In this document: positions 1,064-27,203 of the stretch, in pieces
Layout: every line of letters starts with the position of its first letter
Position numbering within the stretch: the stretch's first letter is position 1
Assembly (NCBI GenBank): GCA_000388065.2
Contig: KB932211.1
Length of the DNA: 29,657 bases
Reading direction: 5' to 3' (one strand)
Source of the DNA: Fonticula alba ATCC 38817
Taxonomy: Eukaryota; Protista; Nucleariida
Position numbers and translations under genes: made by a program
Notes under the pieces: generated by a model
Databases searched by the model: none
Told to the model about the DNA's origin: nothing
What the model saw: the letters and a program-made list of their open reading frames with translations, nothing else

Positions 1064-1073
1064 NNNNNNNNNN
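1064..1073. other. Assembly gap (10 N)
   Basis: Run of N abutting a minisatellite. Confidence 0.99.
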
Positions 1074-2738: not shown

Positions 2739-3299
2739 NNNNNNNNNNNNNNNNNNNNNNNNNNNNNNNNNNNNNNNNNNNNNNNNNNNNNNNNNNNNNN
2801 NNNNNNNNNNNNNNNNNNNNNNNNNNNNNNNNNNNNNNNNNNNNNNNNNNNNNNNNNNNNNNNNNNNNNNNNNNNNNNNNNNNNNNNNNNNNNNNNNNNN
2901 NNNNNNNNNNNNNNNNNNNNNNNNNNNNNNNNNNNNNNNNNNNNNNNNNNNNNNNNNNNNNNNNNNNNNNNNNNNNNNNNNNNNNNNNNNNNNNNNNNNN
3001 NNNNNNNNNNNNNNNNNNNNNNNNNNNNNNNNNNNNNNNNNNNNNNNNNNNNNNNNNNNNNNNNNNNNNNNNNNNNNNNNNNNNNNNNNNNNNNNNNNNN
3101 NNNNNNNNNNNNNNNNNNNNNNNNNNNNNNNNNNNNNNNNNNNNNNNNNNNNNNNNNNNNNNNNNNNNNNNNNNNNNNNNNNNNNNNNNNNNNNNNNNNN
3201 NNNNNNNNNNNNNNNNNNNNNNNNNNNNNNNNNNNNNNNNNNNNNNNNNNNNNNNNNNNNNNNNNNNNNNNNNNNNNNNNNNNNNNNNNNNNNNNNNNN
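2739..3299. other. Assembly gap (561 N)
   Basis: Run of N that interrupts a CCDC22 exon. Confidence 0.99.
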
Positions 3300-10471: not shown

Positions 10472-11006
10472 NNNNNNNNNNNNNNNNNNNNNNNNNNNNN
10501 NNNNNNNNNNNNNNNNNNNNNNNNNNNNNNNNNNNNNNNNNNNNNNNNNNNNNNNNNNNNNNNNNNNNNNNNNNNNNNNNNNNNNNNNNNNNNNNNNNNN
10601 NNNNNNNNNNNNNNNNNNNNNNNNNNNNNNNNNNNNNNNNNNNNNNNNNNNNNNNNNNNNNNNNNNNNNNNNNNNNNNNNNNNNNNNNNNNNNNNNNNNN
10701 NNNNNNNNNNNNNNNNNNNNNNNNNNNNNNNNNNNNNNNNNNNNNNNNNNNNNNNNNNNNNNNNNNNNNNNNNNNNNNNNNNNNNNNNNNNNNNNNNNNN
10801 NNNNNNNNNNNNNNNNNNNNNNNNNNNNNNNNNNNNNNNNNNNNNNNNNNNNNNNNNNNNNNNNNNNNNNNNNNNNNNNNNNNNNNNNNNNNNNNNNNNN
10901 NNNNNNNNNNNNNNNNNNNNNNNNNNNNNNNNNNNNNNNNNNNNNNNNNNNNNNNNNNNNNNNNNNNNNNNNNNNNNNNNNNNNNNNNNNNNNNNNNNNN
11001 NNNNNN
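10472..11006. other. Assembly gap (535 N)
   Basis: Run of N. Confidence 0.99.
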
Positions 11007-11655: not shown

Positions 11656-12131
11656 NNNNNNNNNNNNNNNNNNNNNNNNNNNNNNNNNNNNNNNNNNNNN
11701 NNNNNNNNNNNNNNNNNNNNNNNNNNNNNNNNNNNNNNNNNNNNNNNNNNNNNNNNNNNNNNNNNNNNNNNNNNNNNNNNNNNNNNNNNNNNNNNNNNNN
11801 NNNNNNNNNNNNNNNNNNNNNNNNNNNNNNNNNNNNNNNNNNNNNNNNNNNNNNNNNNNNNNNNNNNNNNNNNNNNNNNNNNNNNNNNNNNNNNNNNNNN
11901 NNNNNNNNNNNNNNNNNNNNNNNNNNNNNNNNNNNNNNNNNNNNNNNNNNNNNNNNNNNNNNNNNNNNNNNNNNNNNNNNNNNNNNNNNNNNNNNNNNNN
12001 NNNNNNNNNNNNNNNNNNNNNNNNNNNNNNNNNNNNNNNNNNNNNNNNNNNNNNNNNNNNNNNNNNNNNNNNNNNNNNNNNNNNNNNNNNNNNNNNNNNN
12101 NNNNNNNNNNNNNNNNNNNNNNNNNNNNNNN
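11656..12131. other. Assembly gap (476 N)
   Basis: Run of N. Confidence 0.99.
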
Positions 12132-12734: not shown

Positions 12735-12961
12735 GCACCCGCGCCGCCGGACGCCTCCCCCAGGCCGTCCCCCCACCTCCCAGTCTGTTTTTTTTGATGT
12801 ACATTTCCCCTGCCTCTTCCCCCCCCCCTCCTCTGTCCTTCCCCCCCCCCTCCTCGCGTGCGCTCGCCGGTCTCTAACCTCGCCGCCACCCTGTGTCCGC
12901 CGTCTGTGCCCCCTCTTCAGAGCAACTTGGTGGATACATCCCTCCCGAACAGCCAATCACC

Positions 12962-14280
12962 ATGCCCATTGAGCAGATCACCAGCGACACCGAGTCCATG
13001 GCCGGCGACGTCCCCATGTCCCCCAACCTCTTCCACACCATCTCCGCGCTGGAGAGCCTCCAGGCCAAGCGCAACGAGCTGGAGGCCCAGCTGCGCCTGG
13101 AGATCTTCAAGCTGGAGTCCGAGTACCAGAAGAAGTACAACGAGCTCTACGAGCGCGTACGTGCCGCCGCCGCCACACACACACACACACACACCACACG
13201 CTCGTGGTGTGCTTGTCGCGCCCTCCCCCAGTCTCCCCCCTGGGCCGCTCTGCTCCTTCTCGAGCCACTGACCCTGCCCCTCCCCCATACCCCCCCCCCG
13301 GCCGGCGCACACACACAGCGCACTGAGATCATCTCCGGCGCCTCCCACCCCACCGAGGAGGAGCTGAAGTTCGTCGGCCCCTTCGCGCAGGACCTCCTGT
13401 CGATCGACGCCGTCAAGGACGCCCTCTCGGCCCCCTTCGACCCGGCCACCGCCGAGGGGATCCCCAACTTCTGGGCCCAGGTCCTGAACAACCACCCGAT
13501 CCTCAGCGACCTGATCAACGACGAGGATGCCGAGGCTCTGGAGTTCCTGACCAACATCACGGCCGACTACGACGCCGAGAAGCTCTTCTACTCGGTGACC
13601 TTCCACTTCTCGGAGAACCCCTACTTCACCAACGAGACCCTGGTCCGCACCTACTACCTGACCAATGACAACTCCCCGAGCAACACCTTCATGCGCCCGC
13701 TCCGCGCCACCACCACCCAGATTGACTGGAAGGACGGCAAGAACCTCATCGAGGAGGCCAGCCCCGACAGCAGCCAGGGGTCCTTCTTCCAGTTCTTCTG
13801 CGACTCCCACATCGGCCAGGTCATGGACGAGGACATGGACTCCGATGATGAGGGCTACGCCTCCATGCAGAAGATCATCCAGGACCGCATGAGCGAGGAC
13901 TTCCAGATGGGCGAGCTCATCCGCGAGGACATCGTCGGCTGCGCCATCGACTGGTACTCCGGCTATGCCCTGACCTACACCAACTACGTGCGTCTGATGC
14001 CGGCCTCCTCGCGCCCCTGCTGTCTCTCTCTCTCTCTCTCTCCCTCCCCTTTGCCCATGTCCCCGGTCTCTAACGCGCCCATTCACCGGTGCTTTCTCTC
14101 TCTCTTCCCCCCCCCCCCGCGCACACACAGCTCGACGACGATGAGGAGGAGTACGACGAGGATGACGAGGAGTACGATGAGGACGATGAGGACGACGACG
14201 ACGAGGATGAGGACGACGAGGACGACGACGCCGCCCCCGCCGGCGAGCAGGCCCGTCCCACTGAGTGCAACCAGCAGTAA
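12962..14280 (+). CDS. NAP1: Nucleosome assembly protein 1 family histone chaperone, ~337 aa
   Basis: Exons 12962-13156, 13319-13987, 14131-14280. Motifs RTEIISG, GIPNFWAQVLNNHP, DAEALEFLTNI, FHFSENPYFTNETLVRTYY, IDWKDGKNL, SFFQFF, EDIVGCAIDWYSG; acidic tail; terminal ECNQQ (CaaX-type, like the CKQQ of animal and plant NAP1). Confidence 0.95.
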
Positions 14281-15130
14281 GTGGACCCTCGCATGTGCAT
14301 GTGCGTGCGTGCGTGCGTGCGTGCACCCCCCCCCCGGTCGTCTGCGCCCTCCTTCCCTCCCCCTGTGAGGAGGGAAATGGGCTTTTATGCCCCTTAGAGG
14401 GGGCAGATGGGCGATGTCGGAGGGGCAAGGCAGCCTGCTCTCCTCTCTCCCTCTCCCTCCCCCCATGCCGCGAGAGGAAAGTGAATGTCCTCTGCGCCGG
14501 TGTGCGTGCACGCGCACCGGGGTGTGCCCAGGCCATCTCGCATGTATCCCAAGATTGCACCACATGCCGTCCGATCAGTCGGAGGGAGGGCGGGGGCGGT
14601 GTGGGAGGACCGCGCATGCGCGCGCGTCGCACACGTCCGCCCGCCCGCCCCTGTCATTTGCGGGAGAGGGAGAGAAAGTTCGCTTTTCCCCATCACCCCT
14701 CTGCTCTCTATATACACCCCCTCTCACACACATACACCCAATACATATACACATAAACACGCCACCCGCCCGATGGTTGTCCTGCCGGCCTCCCTTCTTC
14801 CCCCTCTCTCTCTCTGTTGCTGTATGCTGGGCGGGGGTGCGGATGCGGCGCGGCCAGGGGAGGGCAGGAGGATTTATGTTTGTATTTTTGTGTCTTTTCA
14901 TTTCCGAACGGGGATGTTCTGGGTCCCGGGGGAGAGGGGGATAGAGGAGGGACAGCACACTTGTCGGGGGAGGCGCCGCGGGGGCTCCTCCCTTCGGCCA
15001 AGGACAACACGCCACAAGGTCTCCCAGAGGGGGGGAGGGAGGCATGGAGGAAAGGCGCTGGAGAGCCGAGAAGAAAGGCCCGGAGGGGATGGGAACCGGG
15101 GAAGGGACCGGGGTGGCGCCGGCACGCCCA

Positions 15131-15989
15131 TCAGAGCAGGGCAAGGGTCATCTGGTCCAGGACCTCCGGGGCGGCACCGCTGGAGTTCAGCAGCTTCTGG
15201 AAGTCCTCGAAGTTGATGAGACCATCCTGGCATCGGAGAGGGGGGGGGGGATGCGTGAGAGGGCAGAAGCGAGGGAGGGAGAGAGAGAGAGAGGCAGAAT
15301 GAAAGGAGGCGAGAGCAGAGTGCGCCGATTGTGCCCGGCCGGGCACAATGCACGGCCACACGCACCCCGTCATGGTCGCCGGAAATCATGGCCCGATCGA
15401 CCAGCTGCTGCAGCTGCACCGGGCCCAGGTTGTCGCCGACCATGGTGCGAAGAACGCGGAACAGGTCGCCGGGGCTGATGAAGCCGTCCCGGTCGACGTC
15501 GTACACCCGGAACATGAACTCCAGCCGCTCCAGGTGCGTCCCGCGGGTGCTGAAAATCTTGAGTGCCTGTGGGTGGGGATGGGGGGAGGGGGCGAGGCCG
15601 GTGTGCGGCCCGGGAGGGTCAGAGGAGGGGAAGGGAAAGAGGAGGCTGGGGGAGGGGCAAACACGGAGGGAGGGGAGAGCCAGAGGGAGAGGAAGGGGAG
15701 GGCCAGAGGGGCTGCGCACCCGCGCGAACTCGGCGAAGTCCACATCGCCGCCACCGTCGGCGTCCAGGACCTGAATGATCCGCCGGGCAAGGGGGTTGGT
15801 CGAAACGCCAGCCACCGCGGCAAACTCCTCGTGGTCCACGGCGCCGGAGCCGTCGGCGTCCAGGCGCCGGAAGCGAATTAGCGCCCGAGTGAGCTCCTCG
15901 TTGGTGAGGCCGACGTCGCGGGAGAGGGAGTCCAGGGAGGCGGCCTGGTCCTCCTTGTTGGCCAGGAGCTGGGACTGGTGTGCGCCCAT
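15131..15989 (-). CDS. CNB1: Calcineurin regulatory subunit B (4 EF hands, N-myristoylation signal), ~188 aa
   Basis: Exons 15989-15720, 15566-15366, 15226-15131. MGAHQS (MGxxxS); RFRRLDADGSG; NPLARRII; FMFRVYDVDRDGFIS; MVGDNL..QLQQLVD; DHDGDGLINFEDF. Confidence 0.92.
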
Positions 15990-19934: not shown

Positions 19935-22900
19935 ATGTCGTTCATGAACACCTTCACCAAAAACTCCCTCAGCGCGCTGGAGTCGGCCCAGAACCTGGCG
20001 CGCGGCCTGCAGCACTCGGTCATCCAGCCGGTGCACCTGGCGGTCATCCTCTTTGACCAGCGCGAGGCCCAGCGGGCCAACCCGATGGCCGGGTCCTCGG
20101 AGGCCGGGTCGGCGGACTTCAGCCTCGGCCCGGCGCTGGTCGAGCGCGCCGGCGGCGACTTGGACCTGCTCAAGGGGTCCCTGCGCCAGCTGCTAAAGCG
20201 CATCCCCTCGCAAACCCCGGCCCCGGTGCAGGTGGAAGTGGGCCCGCACCTGCTGGCGGTCCTGCGGTCGGCCAACAACCTGCGCATGCAGCAGCAGGAC
20301 TCGCACACGGCGCTGGACCACCTGGTGCTGGCCCTGGCCGGGGCCGACCAGTCCCCGGGCGCGGCCAGCCCCGGGCAGAGCGCCGCCGTGCGCGACGTGC
20401 AGGAGGCCCTGCGCGGGGCCGGCATCACGGCCGCCAAGCTGACCGAGGCGGCCCGTGCCACGCGCGGCTCGCGCAAGGTCACCAGCGACATGGACGATGC
20501 CAACTTCGAAGCCCTGAAGAAGTACGGCGTGGACCTGGTGGAGCGCGCCTCCAGCGGCCACCTGGACCCGGTCATCGGCCGGGATGACGAAATCCGCCGA
20601 GTCATCCGGGTCCTCTCGCGCCGGACCAAGAACAACCCCATCCTCATCGGCGAGCCGGGTGTCGGCAAGACGGCCGTGGTGGAGGGGCTGGCGCAGCGCA
20701 TCGTGCGCGGCGACGTGCCGGACGGCCTGCACTGCCGGGTCATCTCCCTGGACATGGGTGCCCTGCTGGCCGGGGCGTCGTATCGCGGCGAATTTGAGGC
20801 CCGGCTGAAGGCCGTCCTGCAGGAGGTCAGCGATGCCCGGGGCCGGGTGATTCTCTTCATCGATGAGATCCACACGGTGCTGGGGGCCGGCCGGAGCGGC
20901 GACGGCGGGGCCATGGACGCGGCCAACCTGCTGAAGCCGATGCTGGCCCGTGGCGAGCTCCGGTGCATTGGTGCCACCACGCTGGAGGAGTACCGGAAGC
21001 ATGTGGAGAAGGATGCGGCCTTCGAGCGGCGCTTCCAGCCGGTCCACGTGTCGGAGCCCACCATCCCGGACACCATTTCCATCCTGCGCGGCATCAAGGA
21101 CAAGTATGAGTCGCACCATGGTGTGCGGATTGCCGATGCGGCGCTCGTGAGCGCGGCCCAGCTCGGCGCCCGGTACATCACGCAGCGCTTCCTGCCGGAC
21201 AAGGCCATCGACCTGCTGGACGAGGCGTGTGCCAATGTCCGCGTGCAGTTGGACTCCCAGCCGGAGGCCATCGACAAGCTGGAGCGCCGGCAGCTTCGCC
21301 TGGAGGTGGAACTGGCCGCCCTGGAGAAGGAGGAGGCCGGTGACCAGGCGGCCCGGCAGCGTGCGGACGCCGTGCGCGCCTCGCTGGCCAGCATCCAGGA
21401 GTCGCTGGCGCCGTTGCGCGCGCGCTACGAGGCCGAGCGCGGCCGTGTCGACCAGATGCGCACCCTTCGCCGGAAGCTGGACGAAGTGTACCAGAAGATG
21501 GAGGAGGCCGAGCGCAATCGCCAGACCGATGTGGTGGCCGACCTGCGGTACGGGGCCATCCCGGACTTGCGGGCGCGCCTGGAAGAGCTGAGCACCCTGG
21601 AGGAGGCGGACCGCAGCGCGCCGGCATCCCCGGGCGGCGCCGGCACTCCGGCCGAGGCGCCCATGCTCAGTGAGACCGTGGGGCCGGACCAAATTGCGGA
21701 GATCGTTTCCCGGTGGACCGGCATCCCGGTGTCGCGGCTGACGCAAACCGAGCGCGACAAGCTCCTGCACCTGGGGGAGAACCTGCACAAGCAGGTGATC
21801 GGCCAGTCGGAGGCGGTGGACGCCGTGGCGGCGGCCGTGCTCCGGTCGCGTGCCGGGCTTTCGCGCGAGCGCCAGCCGGTCGGGTCCTTCCTCTTCCTCG
21901 GGCCCACCGGTGTCGGTAAGACCGAGCTGGCCAAGGCCCTGGCGCGGGAGCTCTTCGATGACGAGTCCAACATCGTGCGCTTGGACATGTCCGAGTACAT
22001 GGAGCGTCACAGTGTGGCCCGGCTGATTGGCTCGCCTCCGGGGTATGTTGGCTATGATGATGGTGGCCAGCTGACGGAGGCCGTGCGCCGGCGGCCCTAC
22101 TCGGTGGTGCTCTTCGACGAGGTGGAGAAGGCCCACCCGGATGTGTTCAACTCCCTGCTGCAGGTGCTGGATGATGCACGCCTGACCGATGGCCGGGGGC
22201 GCGTGGTGGACTTCTCCAACTGCGTGCTCATCATGACCAGCAACCTGGGCGCCAAGCATCTGTTTGACAGCTTCCGCCAGGGGGCGGGCGATGGCACCGG
22301 CACCGGCACCGGCACCGGTGGCGGCCTGTCGAAGGCCACCCGGGAGAAGGTGATGGACGCCGTGCGCGGGCACTTCCGCCCGGAGTTCCTCAACCGCCTG
22401 GATGACATCGTGCTGTTTGCGCCGCTGCGGACGGACGAGCTGCGCCAGGTGGTTCGCCTGCAGTTCGGCTCGGTCGGCCGGCGCCTGCGTGATCGGAACA
22501 TCGAGCTGGTCATCGAGGATTCGGCCTGCGACCTGGTCCTGGCCGAGGCGTATGACCCGGCGTACGGGGCCCGGCCGCTGCGCCGGTACATCGAGAAGAA
22601 CCTGGTCACCGAGCTGTCGCGGCAGCTGGTGGCCGGGGTCCTGCACAATGACCAGCGGGTGGCCGTGGCCGCGGAGCCTGGCGCCCGGCGCTTTGCCTTC
22701 CGCGTCCTGGCGGACCTGGCCCCGGCCACCGGCGCCGGCCGCGGGGGGCGCGATGTCGACGACGACGACGACAGCACCATGGACCTGGTCGGTGGTGGCA
22801 ATGGCGCGGTCGGGCGCAAGGGCGTCCCCGGCGGTGCCCGGCAGCACCATGCGGCCAAGCGCCAGAACACCGGCGGCGGCCGCATTGAGTCCCTCAGCAG

Positions 22901-22964
22901 CGATGACTTTGAGGACCTGAGCGGCGACGAGGACAGCCACATGGAGGTGGACTCGCGTCGCTAA
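19935..22964 (+). CDS. HSP104: Cytosolic Hsp100/ClpB-family disaggregase (Hsp104/Hsp101), 1009 aa, no introns
   Basis: Single ORF with an in-frame upstream stop at 19851. N-domain; NBD1 [28 protein letters not shown]; M-domain DLRYGAI; NBD2 [42 protein letters not shown]. No organellar transit peptide; acidic C-tail. Confidence 0.97.
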
Positions 22965-24451
22965 AAGGGGGGTGGGGCAGAAACGCGTGCGCACGGCCAC
23001 GCGCGCGCGCTGCATCCCCCTCTCTCTCCCCCCCCTTTTGGTGTGCAGGGCTTTCTCCCTCGGCGCGCGCTCCACGCCTGCTGTGACAGCGCGCGGGAGT
23101 TTTTGGAGGAGCCGAAAAGAGAGCATGCCCATCGCATCCGCATCGCATCCGCATCGCACCGAGAGAGCGCGCGCGCGCGATGACACAACACTGGTGGGCA
23201 TGCGCGGAGCCCCCTCCTCCCTCTCTCTCTCTCTCCGCGCCGGCGGTTGCCGCCTCGCCCCCTTTGCCTTGCCCCCCTTCCCCTCCTCCTCCACTTCTTC
23301 AACATCCTCCTTCACATATACACCCCATATATTTTCCCCTGTGCTGCCAACTGCGGGGCCTCTCTCCCTCTCCCTTCTCTCAGTGCCCTAGAGAGAGGGA
23401 AAAGAACTCCCACACACATGCAAAATAGACACAGATATCTCAGAAAAGAATCCTCTCAACAAAGACACATGATGCGCCGCGCGCCCCGGGGGTGGTCCTC
23501 TCTCGCGGCGACATGCTCTCGGCCCCTTTCCCCTGCCTGCCTGCTGGTCCTCCCCTGGTGGCTGCCTCTGTCGCCCGCCCGGCCGCCTGCCGTGATCGGC
23601 GTGCGGAAGGGCCCCGGCAGGGGGGGGGGGGGCCAGACAAAAGTGGCGGCGGTGGGACCACATACGCATGGGCACAGACCTGGCCGACGCCGCGGGCGGG
23701 GGGCCTCCAGGGGCGAGGAAGACACCCTCCCCAAACACCAGACAGGGGGGGAGGAGGAGGAGGAGGAGGACAGGCCGGGGAAGGGGCCGACACCGAGCGG
23801 CCACGCATGCTGTGTGCGCATGCACGCGCACTGATGGGTATCATATTCGAGGTGTATTTTGTGGGACGCTCTCCCCGAAGAGAAGGGGACAGAAAAGGGA
23901 CGATAGATGCATGTGCGTGTGGCAAACAAACAACGACAGTGTGATGTGACGCGCGGACGGCTCGCCTCGGCGCGCTAGAGAGAGGGGGGAGGAGGGGGGA
24001 AGGGGGAGATATGCCTGCCCCAGGCAGAGGGGCGGGGGAAGGAAAGAGAGAGAGAGAGAGAGGCAGCGCGAGGTGCGAGAGGCGGAAGAGGAAGAAGAGG
24101 GGAGCTTCGCTTTGACGGCCCACACACCACCCATACACAGCCCATGCGGCGGCGAGCACGCTCCTGTCCATTTGAACCCGGCTTGGGGCTCTCGTGCGCG
24201 CGTCATACACTTCCCCCCTGCGTCACCCGGCTCTCGTGAGCGTGCCCCGAGAGGGAGGGAGGGAGAGAAAGAGAGAGAGAGAGAGAGAGACACACACACA
24301 CAGAGGCTGAGGAAGTGTGTTGCGCGCGACGAGAGGTGTGTTGGCATGTGTATGTGTAGGTGGGTGGGCATGCGCGCGCGTGCCCTGCGCGGCCGAGCGC
24401 CCCCCTCGGCCCCACGGTGCATTCGTCGCCTTCCGCGCGTGGCAAGTGCGC

Positions 24452-25431
24452 TTAGCAGGCGCAGGAATCGCCGCCGGAGGGGGGGTTGTCCTCCAGGCGG
24501 ATGTTGGTGCTGAAGTCGCTGTACCTGCGGGGGGGGGGGTGCGACGGGGCGGGCGCACACACGAAGGGCAGACGGAGGGAGGGAGGGAGGAAGGGTCAGA
24601 GGATGCGAGGAGCGCGGCAGAGGGGCAGCCAACCAAGAAGAAGGGGGCGGGGCCCGGCGCGGCGTACGGGTCGGCGACGGGGTCCTGCTCGAGAGCCTTG
24701 CGAGAAACGGTGAGGAAAGCCTGCTCGACGTTGAGGTTCTCACGGGCCGAGGTGGGGAAGTAGGGGATGTTGAACTTGTTGGCACACCAGGCCTCGGCGC
24801 GCTTGGCCGTGACCTCATGCTGGTCCTGGGGGTAGTCAAACTTGTTGCCGAGCACGACGAAGGGGAAGCGGTTCGGGTCGCGGGGGCTGGCCTGGATGAG
24901 GAACTCCTCGCGCCAGGAGTCCAGGTTGTCGAAGCTCTTGGCACTGGTGACGTCGAAGACAAGGGCGCAGCAGTCGGCACCGCGGTAGAAGGCCACACCG
25001 AGGGACTGGAAGCGCTCGAGGCCGGCGGTATCCCAGATCTGAGGGGGGGCGGAGGGGGGGGGTGGGCGAGGGGCGAGGGGGGAGGTGAGTGGCCGGGCAA
25101 AGGGGACAGGAGGACGGGGGAGGACTGGCGTACCTGCATGGTGACGTTGCGGTCGTCGATGCAAACCTCCTTGGTCAGGAAGTCGGCACCGATGGTGGCC
25201 TTGTACTGGGTGCTGAACTTGCGGTTGACATACTGGTTCATCAGGCAGGTCTTGCCGACACTGCGGGGGTGGGGGGGGGAGGGGAAAGGAGGGGGCCTTG
25301 TCAGCGGCGGCGGGGAAAGGCGGGGGGAGGGAGGGGGGGTGGCACAAACCCGGAAATACGCCCGGAACACGAACGTACCCAGAGTCCCCGAGGATGATGA
25401 TCTTAAGAAGGAGCTTCTTGCGGGAGGACAT
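24452..25431 (-). CDS. RAB7: Rab7-family small GTPase, 207 aa, with Leu67 in place of the catalytic Gln
   Basis: Exons 25431-25379, 25260-25134, 25038-24668, 24524-24452. [22 protein letters not shown]; [14 protein letters not shown]; [21 protein letters not shown]; [11 protein letters not shown]; GNKFD; TSAR; terminal CAC (CxC geranylgeranylation). Confidence 0.97.
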
Positions 25432-27203
25432 TGTGAGGTGGAAAAATCACTGTCATGACGGCGGGGAGGAGGGGAGGTGTCAGGATCGGGGCGGCGCGCG
25501 GGGGGTGCGGAAGCGGGAGGTCGGGGAGAGGGAGGCACAGGAGCCTGCAAGCCGGACGAGGGGGGGGGGGGGGGAAACGAGGTGCGGGCAATGGGTCAGT
25601 CAGATGCGTCCGTCTGGAGGGCGGGGGGAAGCAACACAAAGGGAGGGGGGGAGACAAAAGAGACCGGAGTCGAGGACCGTGGACACACCTGAGGAGAGGC
25701 GGAGGAGGCAGGCCCGGAAGGCGGGATGCATGTGTATGTGTGCGTGCTGGGGGGGGGGGGCTCGGGGCGGACGCGGGAGGGAGGGCGAGCAGCAATGGAG
25801 GTGTAGGCGGCGACGCGAAGGAGGATAAGGAGGGGGGCGGGCGGCAATATCGTGGCCGTGTGGGAGCGCGAGGAGGGCGCGTCCCGTGCGAACGCTAGCC
25901 AGCCACGATATGTAGGAGAGGGGGCGGAGAGGGGGGGGGGAGCGCGGCAGCAGGGAGAAGGACACAGGAAGGGAGATGGGGACAGAGAGAGAGAGGGGGG
26001 GGAAAGGAGGAAGGCGGGGCGGAGACGAACAAGAGCAATGGAAAGGGGGGAGGATCCTTGATTGATGCCGGGTGTTCCGCCGGCGGGGGGGGGCGGGGCC
26101 CGCGAGGCTGGCCGAAAAAACAACAACACCTCCCCGCTCCTGGCCCGGGGACACAGAGTGTGGGCACACGCGCCGGGAGGGGGCGACTGTTCTGGCCGGG
26201 TCGCACTGGGGGGCGCAGGGGGGCGGAGGCAGGACATCTCCCCCCCCCCTCTGCCTGCGGGGAGGGGGGAAATAATAACACTCTGTCGTCGTGGTCCCGC
26301 CGGCCAACCGGGGACGGCCGGCCGGCCCGCGTCTCGCCCCGGGCAATACGGCTGAGAGGCGGCCATGCTCGACGGGTGGGGGCCCCCTCTCGCCCCGGCA
26401 GGAGCGACCTCCCCAAAACCAGGTACACCAGGGCCGTCCCCGGGGGCATGTTTGCCGGTCTTCGGCCGGGCCGCAGGGCGGGAGGGGCCCCACGCCGGGG
26501 TCCGCGAGTGCCCGGAAAACAATGGACCGGAGTGCACCCAGTCCGAGGACGCGGGGGGGGGGGGGGGCGAGCCCGCCCCGCTGCCCGTTTGGGGAGCCGG
26601 GGGCCGCACCCCGGCCCATGCGCCTGCTCGAAGCAGGATCACCGCGCGCCGGAAGGGTGTGTCCCCCGGTCCGCCGGCCCGGCCGGGGGAGGCCAGGCGG
26701 AGGTCCGGCGCGTCCGCCACGCATGATGACACGGCCGGCGGGGGGGGGGGGGCAGCGTGGCCGTCCGGCGCTCGGCCGCTTCGGGCGTCGAGCCCTGTCC
26801 TCGCGGGTGATCGGGCGCGCTTGTGAGACGGTCGAGGCTGGGCGGCGGGGCCGCCCCCGGGGGCCCCCCCCCCCCGGCGAAAAAGGATATCTTGCCTCCC
26901 CCGCGCCGGCGGGAGGGAGGGAGCGCCGCAAGATGCGCCTGGCAGCATGCCGTGACGCCGGGCGCCGGCTGGCTGTCGAGCAAGTAACCCTATCTCCCTG
27001 GGCGCGCCCCGGCAACGGGCACACGCCCCGCGGCACCGCCGCCGGGGACGAGACACCCCAGGCCAATGTGCTCCTGCGGCGTCCCCGCCGCTCCCCCGGG
27101 CGCGTACCGGGGTCAGGTGGGCCGCCCCCCGGCGGCCCGGCCGGCGGCCGGCCGCACTCGGGATGGCCTTATGTGTGTGTGGGGGTGTGCGCTCGCGGCG
27201 CGC

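What the first reader, a model, noticed from the sequence alone, without database searches (positions are those of the whole stretch)
25018..25020. Rab7 naturally carrying the GTP-locked Q67L substitution
Seen: the spliced Rab7 reads [20 protein letters not shown]. Counting from the start Met, the Leu is exactly residue 67. Its codon is CTC, two bases from CAG/CAA, so one miscalled base cannot explain it. The rest of the gene is intact (open frame, canonical introns, CxC tail). Established: DTAGQE Gln67 positions the catalytic water, Rab7 Q67L is the standard constitutively active laboratory mutant, and Rab25 is a natural DTAGLE Rab. Inference: this is either a specialised, slowly hydrolysing Rab7 paralogue (for example for phagosome, contractile-vacuole or developmental trafficking), or this lineage's Rab7 depends wholly on the Gln finger supplied in trans by TBC GAPs.
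Basis: partly seen in the sequence, partly recalled or inferred. Interest (0 to 1): 0.82.

Follow-up and report, generated by a model that had tools for sequence, protein, structure and literature searches.

The report
Natural Leu67 Rab7 in Fonticula alba
The slime-mould-like amoeba Fonticula alba strongly expresses a normal-looking Rab7 (the switch protein of late endosomes and lysosomes) that naturally carries the Q67L change used in laboratories to slow GTP hydrolysis, so this lineage probably switches Rab7 off through helper GAP proteins alone.

Summary
The window is Fonticula alba scaffold KB932211.1. A minus-strand gene with four coding exons (24452-25431) encodes a 207-aa Rab7 identical to XP_009497596.1. 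Residue 67 is Leu, codon CTC at 25020-25018.

- **Not an error.** RNA contigs from two samples are spliced exactly as modelled and show no differences from the window. A soil metagenome and an unrelated 2025 DNA run carry near-identical contigs. Their only listed difference is a synonymous change in the neighbouring Gly66 codon.
- **Rare.** Of 309 Rab7 proteins inspected, 305 have Gln. The other three Leu cases form an oxymonad clade (Monocercomonoides Rab7a1 and Rab7a2, and a Blattamonas protein). All 79 metagenome Rab7 loci where the motif was found have Gln.
- **Switch regions otherwise canonical.** The guanine-pocket motifs G4 and G5 carry a cluster of unusual substitutions (NKFDYP, and SAR in place of SAK), two of them at human CMT2B disease positions.

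"GTP-locked" is not shown. Rab25 has the same motif and still hydrolyses GTP. Yeast Ypt7 Q68L stays GAP-sensitive and nearly wild type in vivo. My best reading is a working, probably sole, Rab7 whose inactivation depends on the trans fingers of TBC GAPs. I could not scan the genome for a second, canonical Rab7. This scan had not noted the feature elsewhere.

The parts
25018..25020 (-). Codon 67, CTC = Leu, at the position of the switch II catalytic Gln (DTAGLE instead of DTAGQE)
   Evidence: Sequence; numbering; unchanged in RNA and environmental contigs; aligned to human Rab7 residue 67
25379..25431 (-). Coding part of the first coding exon (Met1 to the first two bases of Gly18; start of the P-loop GDSG). 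The exon continues as 5' UTR up to 25449.
   Evidence: RNA contig joint 25260/25379 and coverage up to 25449
25261..25378 (-). Intron 1 (118 nt, GT..AG)
   Evidence: skipped in RNA contigs of X5 and X7
25134..25260 (-). Coding exon 2 (residues 18-60: rest of the P-loop GKT, switch I)
   Evidence: Pfam Ras, E 4.8e-11
25039..25133 (-). Intron 2 (95 nt, GT..AG)
24668..25038 (-). Coding exon 3 (residues 61-184: switch II with Leu67, G4, G5)
   Evidence: Pfam Ras, E 2.5e-29
24525..24667 (-). Intron 3 (143 nt, GT..AG)
24452..24524 (-). Coding exon 4 (hypervariable tail, CAC prenylation motif, TAA stop). The 3' UTR continues below 24452.
   Evidence: RNA contigs continue to 24400 and beyond
25450..26030 (-). 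Probable 5'-UTR intron (581 nt, GT..AG). The upstream non-coding exon begins at 26031.
   Evidence: The X5 RNA contig's 27 loose letters after 25449 match window 26031-26057 (sequence). The flanking dinucleotides read GT..AG on the minus strand. This rests on one contig only.
24829..24846 (-). G4 motif region, N125-K126-F127-D128-Y129-P130. F127, Y129 and P130 are found in none of the 122 other full-length Rab7s compared. Y129 aligns with human L129, a CMT2B site.
24742..24756 (-). G5 motif region, P155-T156-S157-A158-R159, where the consensus is E-T-S-A-K. R159 aligns with human K157, a CMT2B site.

Best explanation
This is the real, highly expressed and selectively maintained Rab7 orthologue of Fonticula alba, most likely its only conventional Rab7. 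The cis catalytic glutamine of switch II has been replaced by leucine through at least two nucleotide steps (CAG > CTG > CTC). Shown: the gene is intact, correctly spliced and abundant in RNA. Leu67 is present in independent environmental DNA. All other switch I and switch II residues, the P-loop, NKxD, the S-A of G5 and the CXC tail are canonical. Inferred: the protein still cycles. Its intrinsic GTP hydrolysis is probably lower than that of a Gln67 Rab7, and inactivation depends on TBC-domain RabGAPs, which insert their own Arg and Gln fingers, so the Rab's own Gln is not chemically required. The unusual guanine-pocket residues (NKFDYP, H134, P155, SAR) may retune nucleotide affinity or exchange to fit a slower hydrolysis step. 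That last point is speculation.
For: Identity and structure of the gene.
Expression and exact splicing with 0 differences in two RNA samples, and Leu67 retained in soil and other DNA runs with only a synonymous neighbouring variant.
Rab7 identity: all 119 other best hits are Rab7/Ypt7, and the best solved structures are human Rab7 (E 2e-94).
Constraint: residues 61-84 match the Rab7 consensus at 23 of 24 positions (Leu67 is the only deviation) and residues 33-48 at 15 of 16. GC3 is 0.89 and Leu67 uses the gene's commonest Leu codon.
No in-paralogue: no other Fonticula-named protein appears in the top 120 of either search made with this protein, and no second Rab7-like contig was laid from either RNA run at 85% likeness, although a foreign Rab7 fragment was laid from X9.
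Mechanistic plausibility: TBC GAPs supply both Arg and Gln, and the Rab's Gln only contacts the GAP backbone (PMC3919270). Ypt7 Q68L is GAP-stimulable and nearly wild type for Vps10 sorting unless GAPs are deleted. Rab25 with natural WDTAGLE retains GTPase activity. A natural Leu67 Rab7 clade persists across two oxymonad genera.
Against: I could not scan the F. alba genome or proteome, so a second, canonical Rab7 is not excluded. In oxymonads the Leu67 proteins coexist with other Rab7 paralogues (PMC6759080). For Rab1 and Rab35 the Gln mutation strongly reduces TBC-GAP-stimulated hydrolysis, so GAP dependence cannot simply be assumed for Rab7 here. I did not look at any F. alba TBC GAP. The protein sits on a long branch (terminal branch 0.53 against a median of 0.07), which would also fit relaxed constraint or a new function. 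No biochemical data exist.
Confidence: 0.6

Rival explanations
1. It is a specialised, slowly hydrolysing Rab7 paralogue that works beside a canonical Gln67 Rab7 encoded elsewhere in the F. alba genome, as in oxymonads. It would serve one branch of the endolysosomal or phagosomal pathway.
For: The only other natural Leu67 Rab7s found (M. exilis Rab7a1 and Rab7a2, and a Blattamonas protein) come from a lineage with nine conventional Rab7 paralogues. The protein has a long terminal branch and divergent G4/G5 regions.
Against: No other Fonticula-named Rab7 appears among the top 120 hits. No second Rab7-like contig was laid from either RNA run. Its contig word depth is high in both RNA runs, though depth is a poor measure of expression. 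From general knowledge, fungi and most unicellular opisthokonts have a single Rab7. None of these points is a genome-wide test.
Confidence: 0.25
2. It is a truly GTP-locked, non-cycling Rab7. Activity would be set by expression, GDI/GEF-controlled membrane delivery, phosphorylation or turnover rather than by hydrolysis, in the manner of Rnd or RhoH proteins.
For: Leu at the catalytic Gln is the classic hydrolysis-impairing change. The best PDB match is the engineered human Rab7 Q67L. In Rab1 and Rab35 the Gln mutation also blunts GAP action.
Against: Ypt7 Q68L is still GAP-stimulable. Rab25 with the same motif hydrolyses GTP. Endosome maturation and retromer carrier release need Rab7 inactivation, so a locked sole Rab7 should be costly.
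Confidence: 0.1
3. Sequencing or assembly error, RNA editing back to Gln, or a decaying pseudogene copy.
For: None beyond the rarity of the residue.
Against: Two bases separate CTC from CAG or CAA. RNA contigs from two samples are identical to the DNA. Independent environmental DNA has the same codon. The frame is open, the introns are canonical and the switch regions are canonical. No assembly gap lies near the gene.
Confidence: 0.02

Closest known systems
Canonical Rab7 / Ypt7 (human RAB7A, yeast Ypt7)
   Same: About 70-77% identity over the G domain and the same length. Switch I and switch II are identical to the consensus except residue 67. It has the CXC tail, and its best hits among sequences and solved structures are all Rab7.
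   Different: Leu instead of Gln67. It has NKFDYP where the consensus is NK(I/V)D(L/V/M)(E/D), plus H134, P155 and R159 (SAR for SAK). The terminal branch is long.
Engineered Rab7 Q67L / Ypt7 Q68L 'constitutively active' mutants (PDB 1T91, 1YHN, 8ZQ3)
   Same: The switch II sequence [13 protein letters not shown] is identical, and this is the top PDB hit.
   Different: Those are laboratory point mutants in a wild-type background. Here the change is natural, fixed and accompanied by guanine-pocket substitutions. The literature shows the yeast mutant is not truly locked.
Oxymonad Rab7a clade (Monocercomonoides exilis Rab7a1 and Rab7a2; Blattamonas nauphoetae 'yptV5')
   Same: These are natural conventional Rab7 proteins with the same [13 protein letters not shown], retained across two genera.
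   Different: They belong to a lineage with nine conventional Rab7 paralogues and keep SAK in G5. They are only 62% identical to the F. alba protein. The tree pairing of the two (support 0.84) is most likely long-branch attraction, because the organisms are unrelated.
Rab25 (Rab11 subfamily)
   Same: It has a natural WDTAGLE motif.
   Different: It belongs to a different Rab subfamily, is an animal-specific paralogue that exists beside Rab11a and Rab11b, and is reported to retain GTPase activity.
CMT2B disease alleles of human RAB7A (K126R, L129F, K157N, N161T/I, V162M)
   Same: F. alba differs from the Rab7 consensus at the positions aligned with L129 (Tyr) and K157 (Arg), both in the nucleotide-base pocket. 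Disease alleles at these sites cause GEF-independent fast nucleotide exchange (PMC10527268).
   Different: The residues are not the same ones (Tyr rather than Phe, Arg rather than Asn). K126, N161 and V162 are conserved in F. alba. No kinetic effect is known for the F. alba residues.

Membership tests
Rab7/Ypt7 subfamily of Rab GTPases | Ras-superfamily G domain with G1 (GxxxxGKT), switch I Thr, G3 DxxG, G4 NKxD and G5 SA(K) | tested here: met
   Pfam Ras E 2.5e-29 and 4.8e-11 on the exon translations. GDSGVGKT, T40, DTAG, NKFD and TSAR are read from the sequence. The G5 Lys is Arg.
Rab7/Ypt7 subfamily of Rab GTPases | Closest relatives are Rab7 proteins rather than another Rab subfamily | tested here: met
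   The top 120 hits that carry a functional name are named Rab7/Ypt7 or generically as small GTPases. The best solved structures are human or rat Rab7, then Chaetomium and yeast Ypt7. No formal tree with other Rab subfamilies was built.
Rab7/Ypt7 subfamily of Rab GTPases | C-terminal double-cysteine prenylation motif (CXC) | tested here: met
   The protein ends in C-A-C.
Rab7/Ypt7 subfamily of Rab GTPases | Switch II catalytic Gln (DTAGQE). This is conserved in the family but is not a criterion for membership. | tested here: not met
   Leu67. 305 of 309 Rab7 proteins and 79 of 79 metagenome loci where the motif was found have Gln.
Rab7/Ypt7 subfamily of Rab GTPases | Function at late endosomes or the vacuole; activation by Mon1-Ccz1; binding of HOPS and retromer | not testable with these tools
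No localisation or interaction data.
GTP-locked (hydrolysis-dead) small GTPases | Intrinsic and GAP-stimulated GTP hydrolysis both abolished, with the protein mostly GTP-bound in vivo | not testable with these tools
   Only the residue is known. Precedents argue against assuming it: Ypt7 Q68L is GAP-stimulable and Rab25 is active.
Sole-copy orthologue (as opposed to a specialised paralogue) | No other Rab7-clade gene in the same genome | tested here: inconclusive
   No other Fonticula protein in the top 120. No second Rab7-like contig in two RNA runs. No relevant note in this scan. None of these is exhaustive.

The most novel reading that the evidence does not exclude
Fonticula alba runs its entire late-endosome, lysosome and phagosome pathway on a single Rab7 that lacks the cis catalytic glutamine and has a remodelled guanine pocket. 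It would be a natural, free-living experiment showing that the Rab's own Gln is dispensable in vivo, because TBC GAPs supply the chemistry in trans. It would also predict co-adapted GAPs and altered nucleotide kinetics.
Probability: 0.5. Interest if true: 0.62.

Novelty: new variant of a known kind. Interest (0 to 1): 0.5.

Why it matters
The Q-to-L change in switch II is the standard tool for making Rabs 'constitutively active', yet biochemistry has questioned what the Rab's own Gln actually does, because TBC GAPs bring their own. A free-living organism that has fixed this change in a conventional, abundantly expressed Rab7, together with an independent oxymonad clade that did the same, gives natural test cases:

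- Is the cis-Gln needed for Rab7 function in vivo?
- Do the cognate GAPs co-evolve with the change?
- Do the accompanying guanine-pocket changes compensate, including those at positions mutated in human CMT2B neuropathy?

If a canonical second copy exists, the finding becomes an example of paralogue specialisation, which is of more modest interest.

Tried and rejected
**Second Rab7 in F. alba.**
- No tool scans this eukaryotic genome.
- Two protein searches with P0001 (exon 3; residues 56-97) listed no other Fonticula protein, but only 120 of more than 4000 hits are shown each time.
- The best unnamed Logan hits, P0002 and P0003, come from other samples. P0003 is AT-rich. P0002 sits in a 59% GC contig with different neighbours. 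Such loci cannot be used to look for F. alba runs.

**Close relatives, to date the change.**
- The metagenome scan found only Rab7s at 77% identity or less, all with Gln where the motif was found (79 loci; none in L052).
- The EukProt hits I resolved are Amoebozoa, not nucleariids.

**Literature.**
- 'Fonticula' plus 'Rab7' gave two papers, neither discussing this protein.
- The supplement listing F. alba GTPases is not held.
- 'DTAGLE' plus 'Rab' gave only Rab25 papers.

**This scan's notes.** Nothing on another Rab7 or on TBC GAPs. The search by sequence was blank, which means nothing.

**Readings rejected.**
- Sequencing error, RNA editing and pseudogene.
- The low-GC bins at 2-4 kb and 10-12 kb as something biological: they are runs of N.
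- The tree pairing of F. alba with M. exilis Rab7a1 as evidence of common origin: both are long branches from unrelated organisms.

**Not done.**
- Rfam found no RNA family in the window.
- I did not run a structure prediction, because the fold is not in question and coordinates could not be measured.

Full report
**What is there.** The finding lies in a minus-strand gene. Reading the reverse complement of 24380-25460 and joining four coding exons gives a 624-nt CDS and a 207-aa protein. The exons are 25431-25379, 25260-25134, 25038-24668 and 24524-24452, separated by GT..AG introns of 118, 95 and 143 nt. Codon 67 is CTC at 25020-25018, inside [10 protein letters not shown], and the tail ends C-A-C. 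The translation is identical to a public protein, 'Ras-like protein Rab-7a [Fonticula alba]' (KCV68029.1 / XP_009497596.1 / A0A058Z194), encoded on scaffold KB932211.1 of GCA_000388065.2. The organism is therefore Fonticula alba, the sorocarp-forming amoeba that is sister to the nucleariids within Holomycota. The exon translations hit Pfam Ras.

**Is Leu67 real?** One read-laying run on 24400-25500 answers this.
- RNA-derived contigs from two samples (X5, X7; assembler depth 346 and 416) skip exactly the three predicted introns (CT..AC on the plus strand) and show zero differences from the window across the CDS. CTC is therefore transcribed, and there is no sign of editing at contig level.
- A 2022 soil metagenome (X10) has pieces 100% identical to intron and UTR sequence of this locus, plus a 151-nt piece across the codon with one difference.
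- A 2025 DNA run of another organism label (X9) has a 391-nt piece with two differences.
- The only difference listed is G>A at 25021, which on the minus strand turns GGC (Gly66) into GGT and is synonymous. The Leu codon directly beside it is unchanged.
- In this gene Gln is always CAG (9 of 9) and CTC is the commonest Leu codon (9 of 16). The shortest path is CAG > CTG > CTC, one replacement followed by one synonymous step. That fits an old, fixed change.
- No assembly gap lies near the gene.

Error, editing and pseudogene readings are effectively excluded.

**How unusual is it?**
- Among the 120 best relatives of exon 3, 119 have WDTAGQE.
- A second search restricted to residues 56-97, which favours proteins sharing the Leu-containing words, brought up one further Leu case, Monocercomonoides exilis Rab7a1.
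- Searching with that protein found Rab7a2 of the same species (82% identical) and a Blattamonas nauphoetae protein (75% identical) with the same [13 protein letters not shown].
- In total 4 of 309 Rab7 proteins have Leu and 305 have Gln.
- All 79 Rab7 loci from metagenomes where the motif was found have Gln.
- Among the 150 best representatives at 50% identity, which reach into divergent Rab7-like proteins, about six lack Gln (His, Val, Thr, Arg, and Leu twice), mostly in multi-domain or very divergent proteins.

A natural Leu67 in a conventional Rab7 is therefore rare but not unique. It has arisen at least twice, in oxymonads and in Fonticula. M. exilis has nine conventional Rab7 paralogues (PMC6759080), so its Leu67 proteins are specialised copies.

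**What else is odd about the protein?** I compared it with 122 full-length Rab7s.
- It departs from consensus residues held by at least 85% of them at V11I, S23C, Q67L, V85A, D104E, R134H, E155P, K159R and A172S.
- Its G4 motif reads N-K-F-D-Y-P. F127, Y129 and P130 occur in none of the other 122 sequences.
- Each rare state that is shared at all is shared with a different single sequence, so there is no hidden close relative.
- By segment, residues 33-48 (switch I) match the consensus at 15 of 16 positions and residues 61-84 (switch II) at 23 of 24, with Leu67 the only deviation.
- The G4 region matches at 8 of 16 positions (the others average 0.73; only 4 of 122 are as low). The G5 region matches at 10 of 14 (the others average 0.91; only 3 of 122 are as low).
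- Mean core identity to other Rab7s is 72.5% against a median of 80.9%. The terminal branch is 0.53 against a median of 0.07, ranking 4th of 123.
- In the alignment to human RAB7A, Y129 aligns with L129 and R159 with K157. Both are sites of CMT2B mutations, which lie in the nucleotide pocket and cause GEF-independent fast exchange (PMC10527268).
- The best solved-structure match is the engineered human Rab7 Q67L (1T91, 1YHN, 8ZQ3), and the second is the L129F disease mutant 3LAW.

The effector- and regulator-facing switch surfaces are therefore under normal constraint, whereas the base-binding pocket has been remodelled. Whether that compensates for Leu67 is inference only.

**Mechanism.** The established background, taken from papers read here, is as follows.
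- In TBC-GAP/Rab complexes the GAP supplies both the Arg and the Gln. The Rab's Gln only contacts the GAP backbone.
- The effect of mutating it differs between Rabs. In Rab5 and Rab33 the mutant has low basal hydrolysis but remains GAP-sensitive. In Rab1 and Rab35 GAP stimulation is much reduced (PMC3919270).
- For the yeast Rab7, Ypt7 Q68L has reduced GTPase activity but keeps considerable GAP stimulation. Cells carrying it sort Vps10 almost normally (5% against 2% mis-sorting) unless Gyp3 and Gyp6 are removed (bioRxiv 10.64898/2026.01.23.701266).
- Rab25, with natural WDTAGLE, is reported to retain GTPase activity (PMC3039820).

These precedents make the most likely reading a working Rab7 with low intrinsic hydrolysis whose switching-off depends on TBC GAPs. 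'GTP-locked' is therefore an over-statement.

**Sole copy or paralogue?** I could not settle this. Three points favour a sole copy:
- No other Fonticula-named protein appears in the two top-120 lists obtained with this protein, which argues against a recent in-paralogue.
- The two RNA runs yielded no second Rab7-like contig at 85% likeness, although the same call laid a 69-nt piece of a foreign Rab7 from X9.
- Contig word depth is high in both RNA runs, though depth is a poor measure of expression.

Against: only the top of long hit lists is visible, contigs drop rare transcripts, and the only other natural Leu67 Rab7s are paralogues. I put the sole-copy reading at roughly two in three.

**Gene structure extra.** The X5 RNA contig continues past 25449 with 27 letters that match 26031-26057. 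The skipped 25450-26030 has GT..AG ends on the minus strand. This indicates a 581-nt intron in the 5' UTR, supported by one contig.

**Novelty and score.** The protein has been public since the genome release under a routine name. I found no paper noting Leu67 in Fonticula or in oxymonad Rab7. This scan had not noted it before on other DNA. It is a new natural variant of a well-known protein kind, with a precedent in another subfamily (Rab25) and an unremarked parallel in oxymonads. It gives a clean test of what the cis-Gln does in Rab7, but it does not overturn current understanding, which already holds that TBC GAPs work in trans. Interest: 0.5.

Noticed in passing
P0130, P0361, P0362 (Monocercomonoides exilis Rab7a1 and Rab7a2; Blattamonas nauphoetae KAK2952083.1): An oxymonad clade of conventional Rab7 proteins naturally carries the same [13 protein letters not shown] (Leu67), conserved across two genera. 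The paper describing the M. exilis Rab7 expansion does not mention it in the passages found.
   Followed up: partly
window 24829-24846 and 24742-24756 (minus strand): The Rab7 guanine-pocket motifs are unusual: NKFDYP, and PTSAR instead of ETSAK. Tyr and Arg sit at the positions aligned with human CMT2B sites L129 and K157.
   Followed up: partly
window 25450-26030 (minus strand): Probable 581-nt GT..AG intron in the 5' UTR of the Rab7 gene. It is inferred from the loose end of one RNA contig, which matches 26031-26057.
   Followed up: partly
window 25021: G>A variant in a soil metagenome (X10) and in a 2025 run of another organism label (X9). It is a synonymous GGC>GGT change at Gly66, and it shows that F. 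alba or a near-identical strain is present in unrelated environmental samples.
   Followed up: partly
window 1064-1073, 2739-3299, 10472-11006, 11656-12131: Runs of N (assembly gaps). They account for the apparent low-GC bins in an otherwise roughly 65-79% GC window.
   Followed up: yes
window 19935-22964 (+), 12893-14368 (+), 14898-15989 (-): Neighbouring genes are an intron-free 1009-aa Hsp104/ClpB-type AAA+ disaggregase, a NAP nucleosome-assembly protein and an EF-hand protein. Several other long ORFs have no Pfam match; in DNA this GC-rich, long ORFs arise by chance.
   Followed up: partly
L082 (Logan SRR30518524 contig, 3990 nt): An unnamed GC-rich (59%, GC3 0.85) eukaryotic contig encodes a split Rab7 with Gln67, 71% identical to the F. 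alba exon 3 product, next to RasGEF and F-box genes. The organism is unknown.
   Followed up: no
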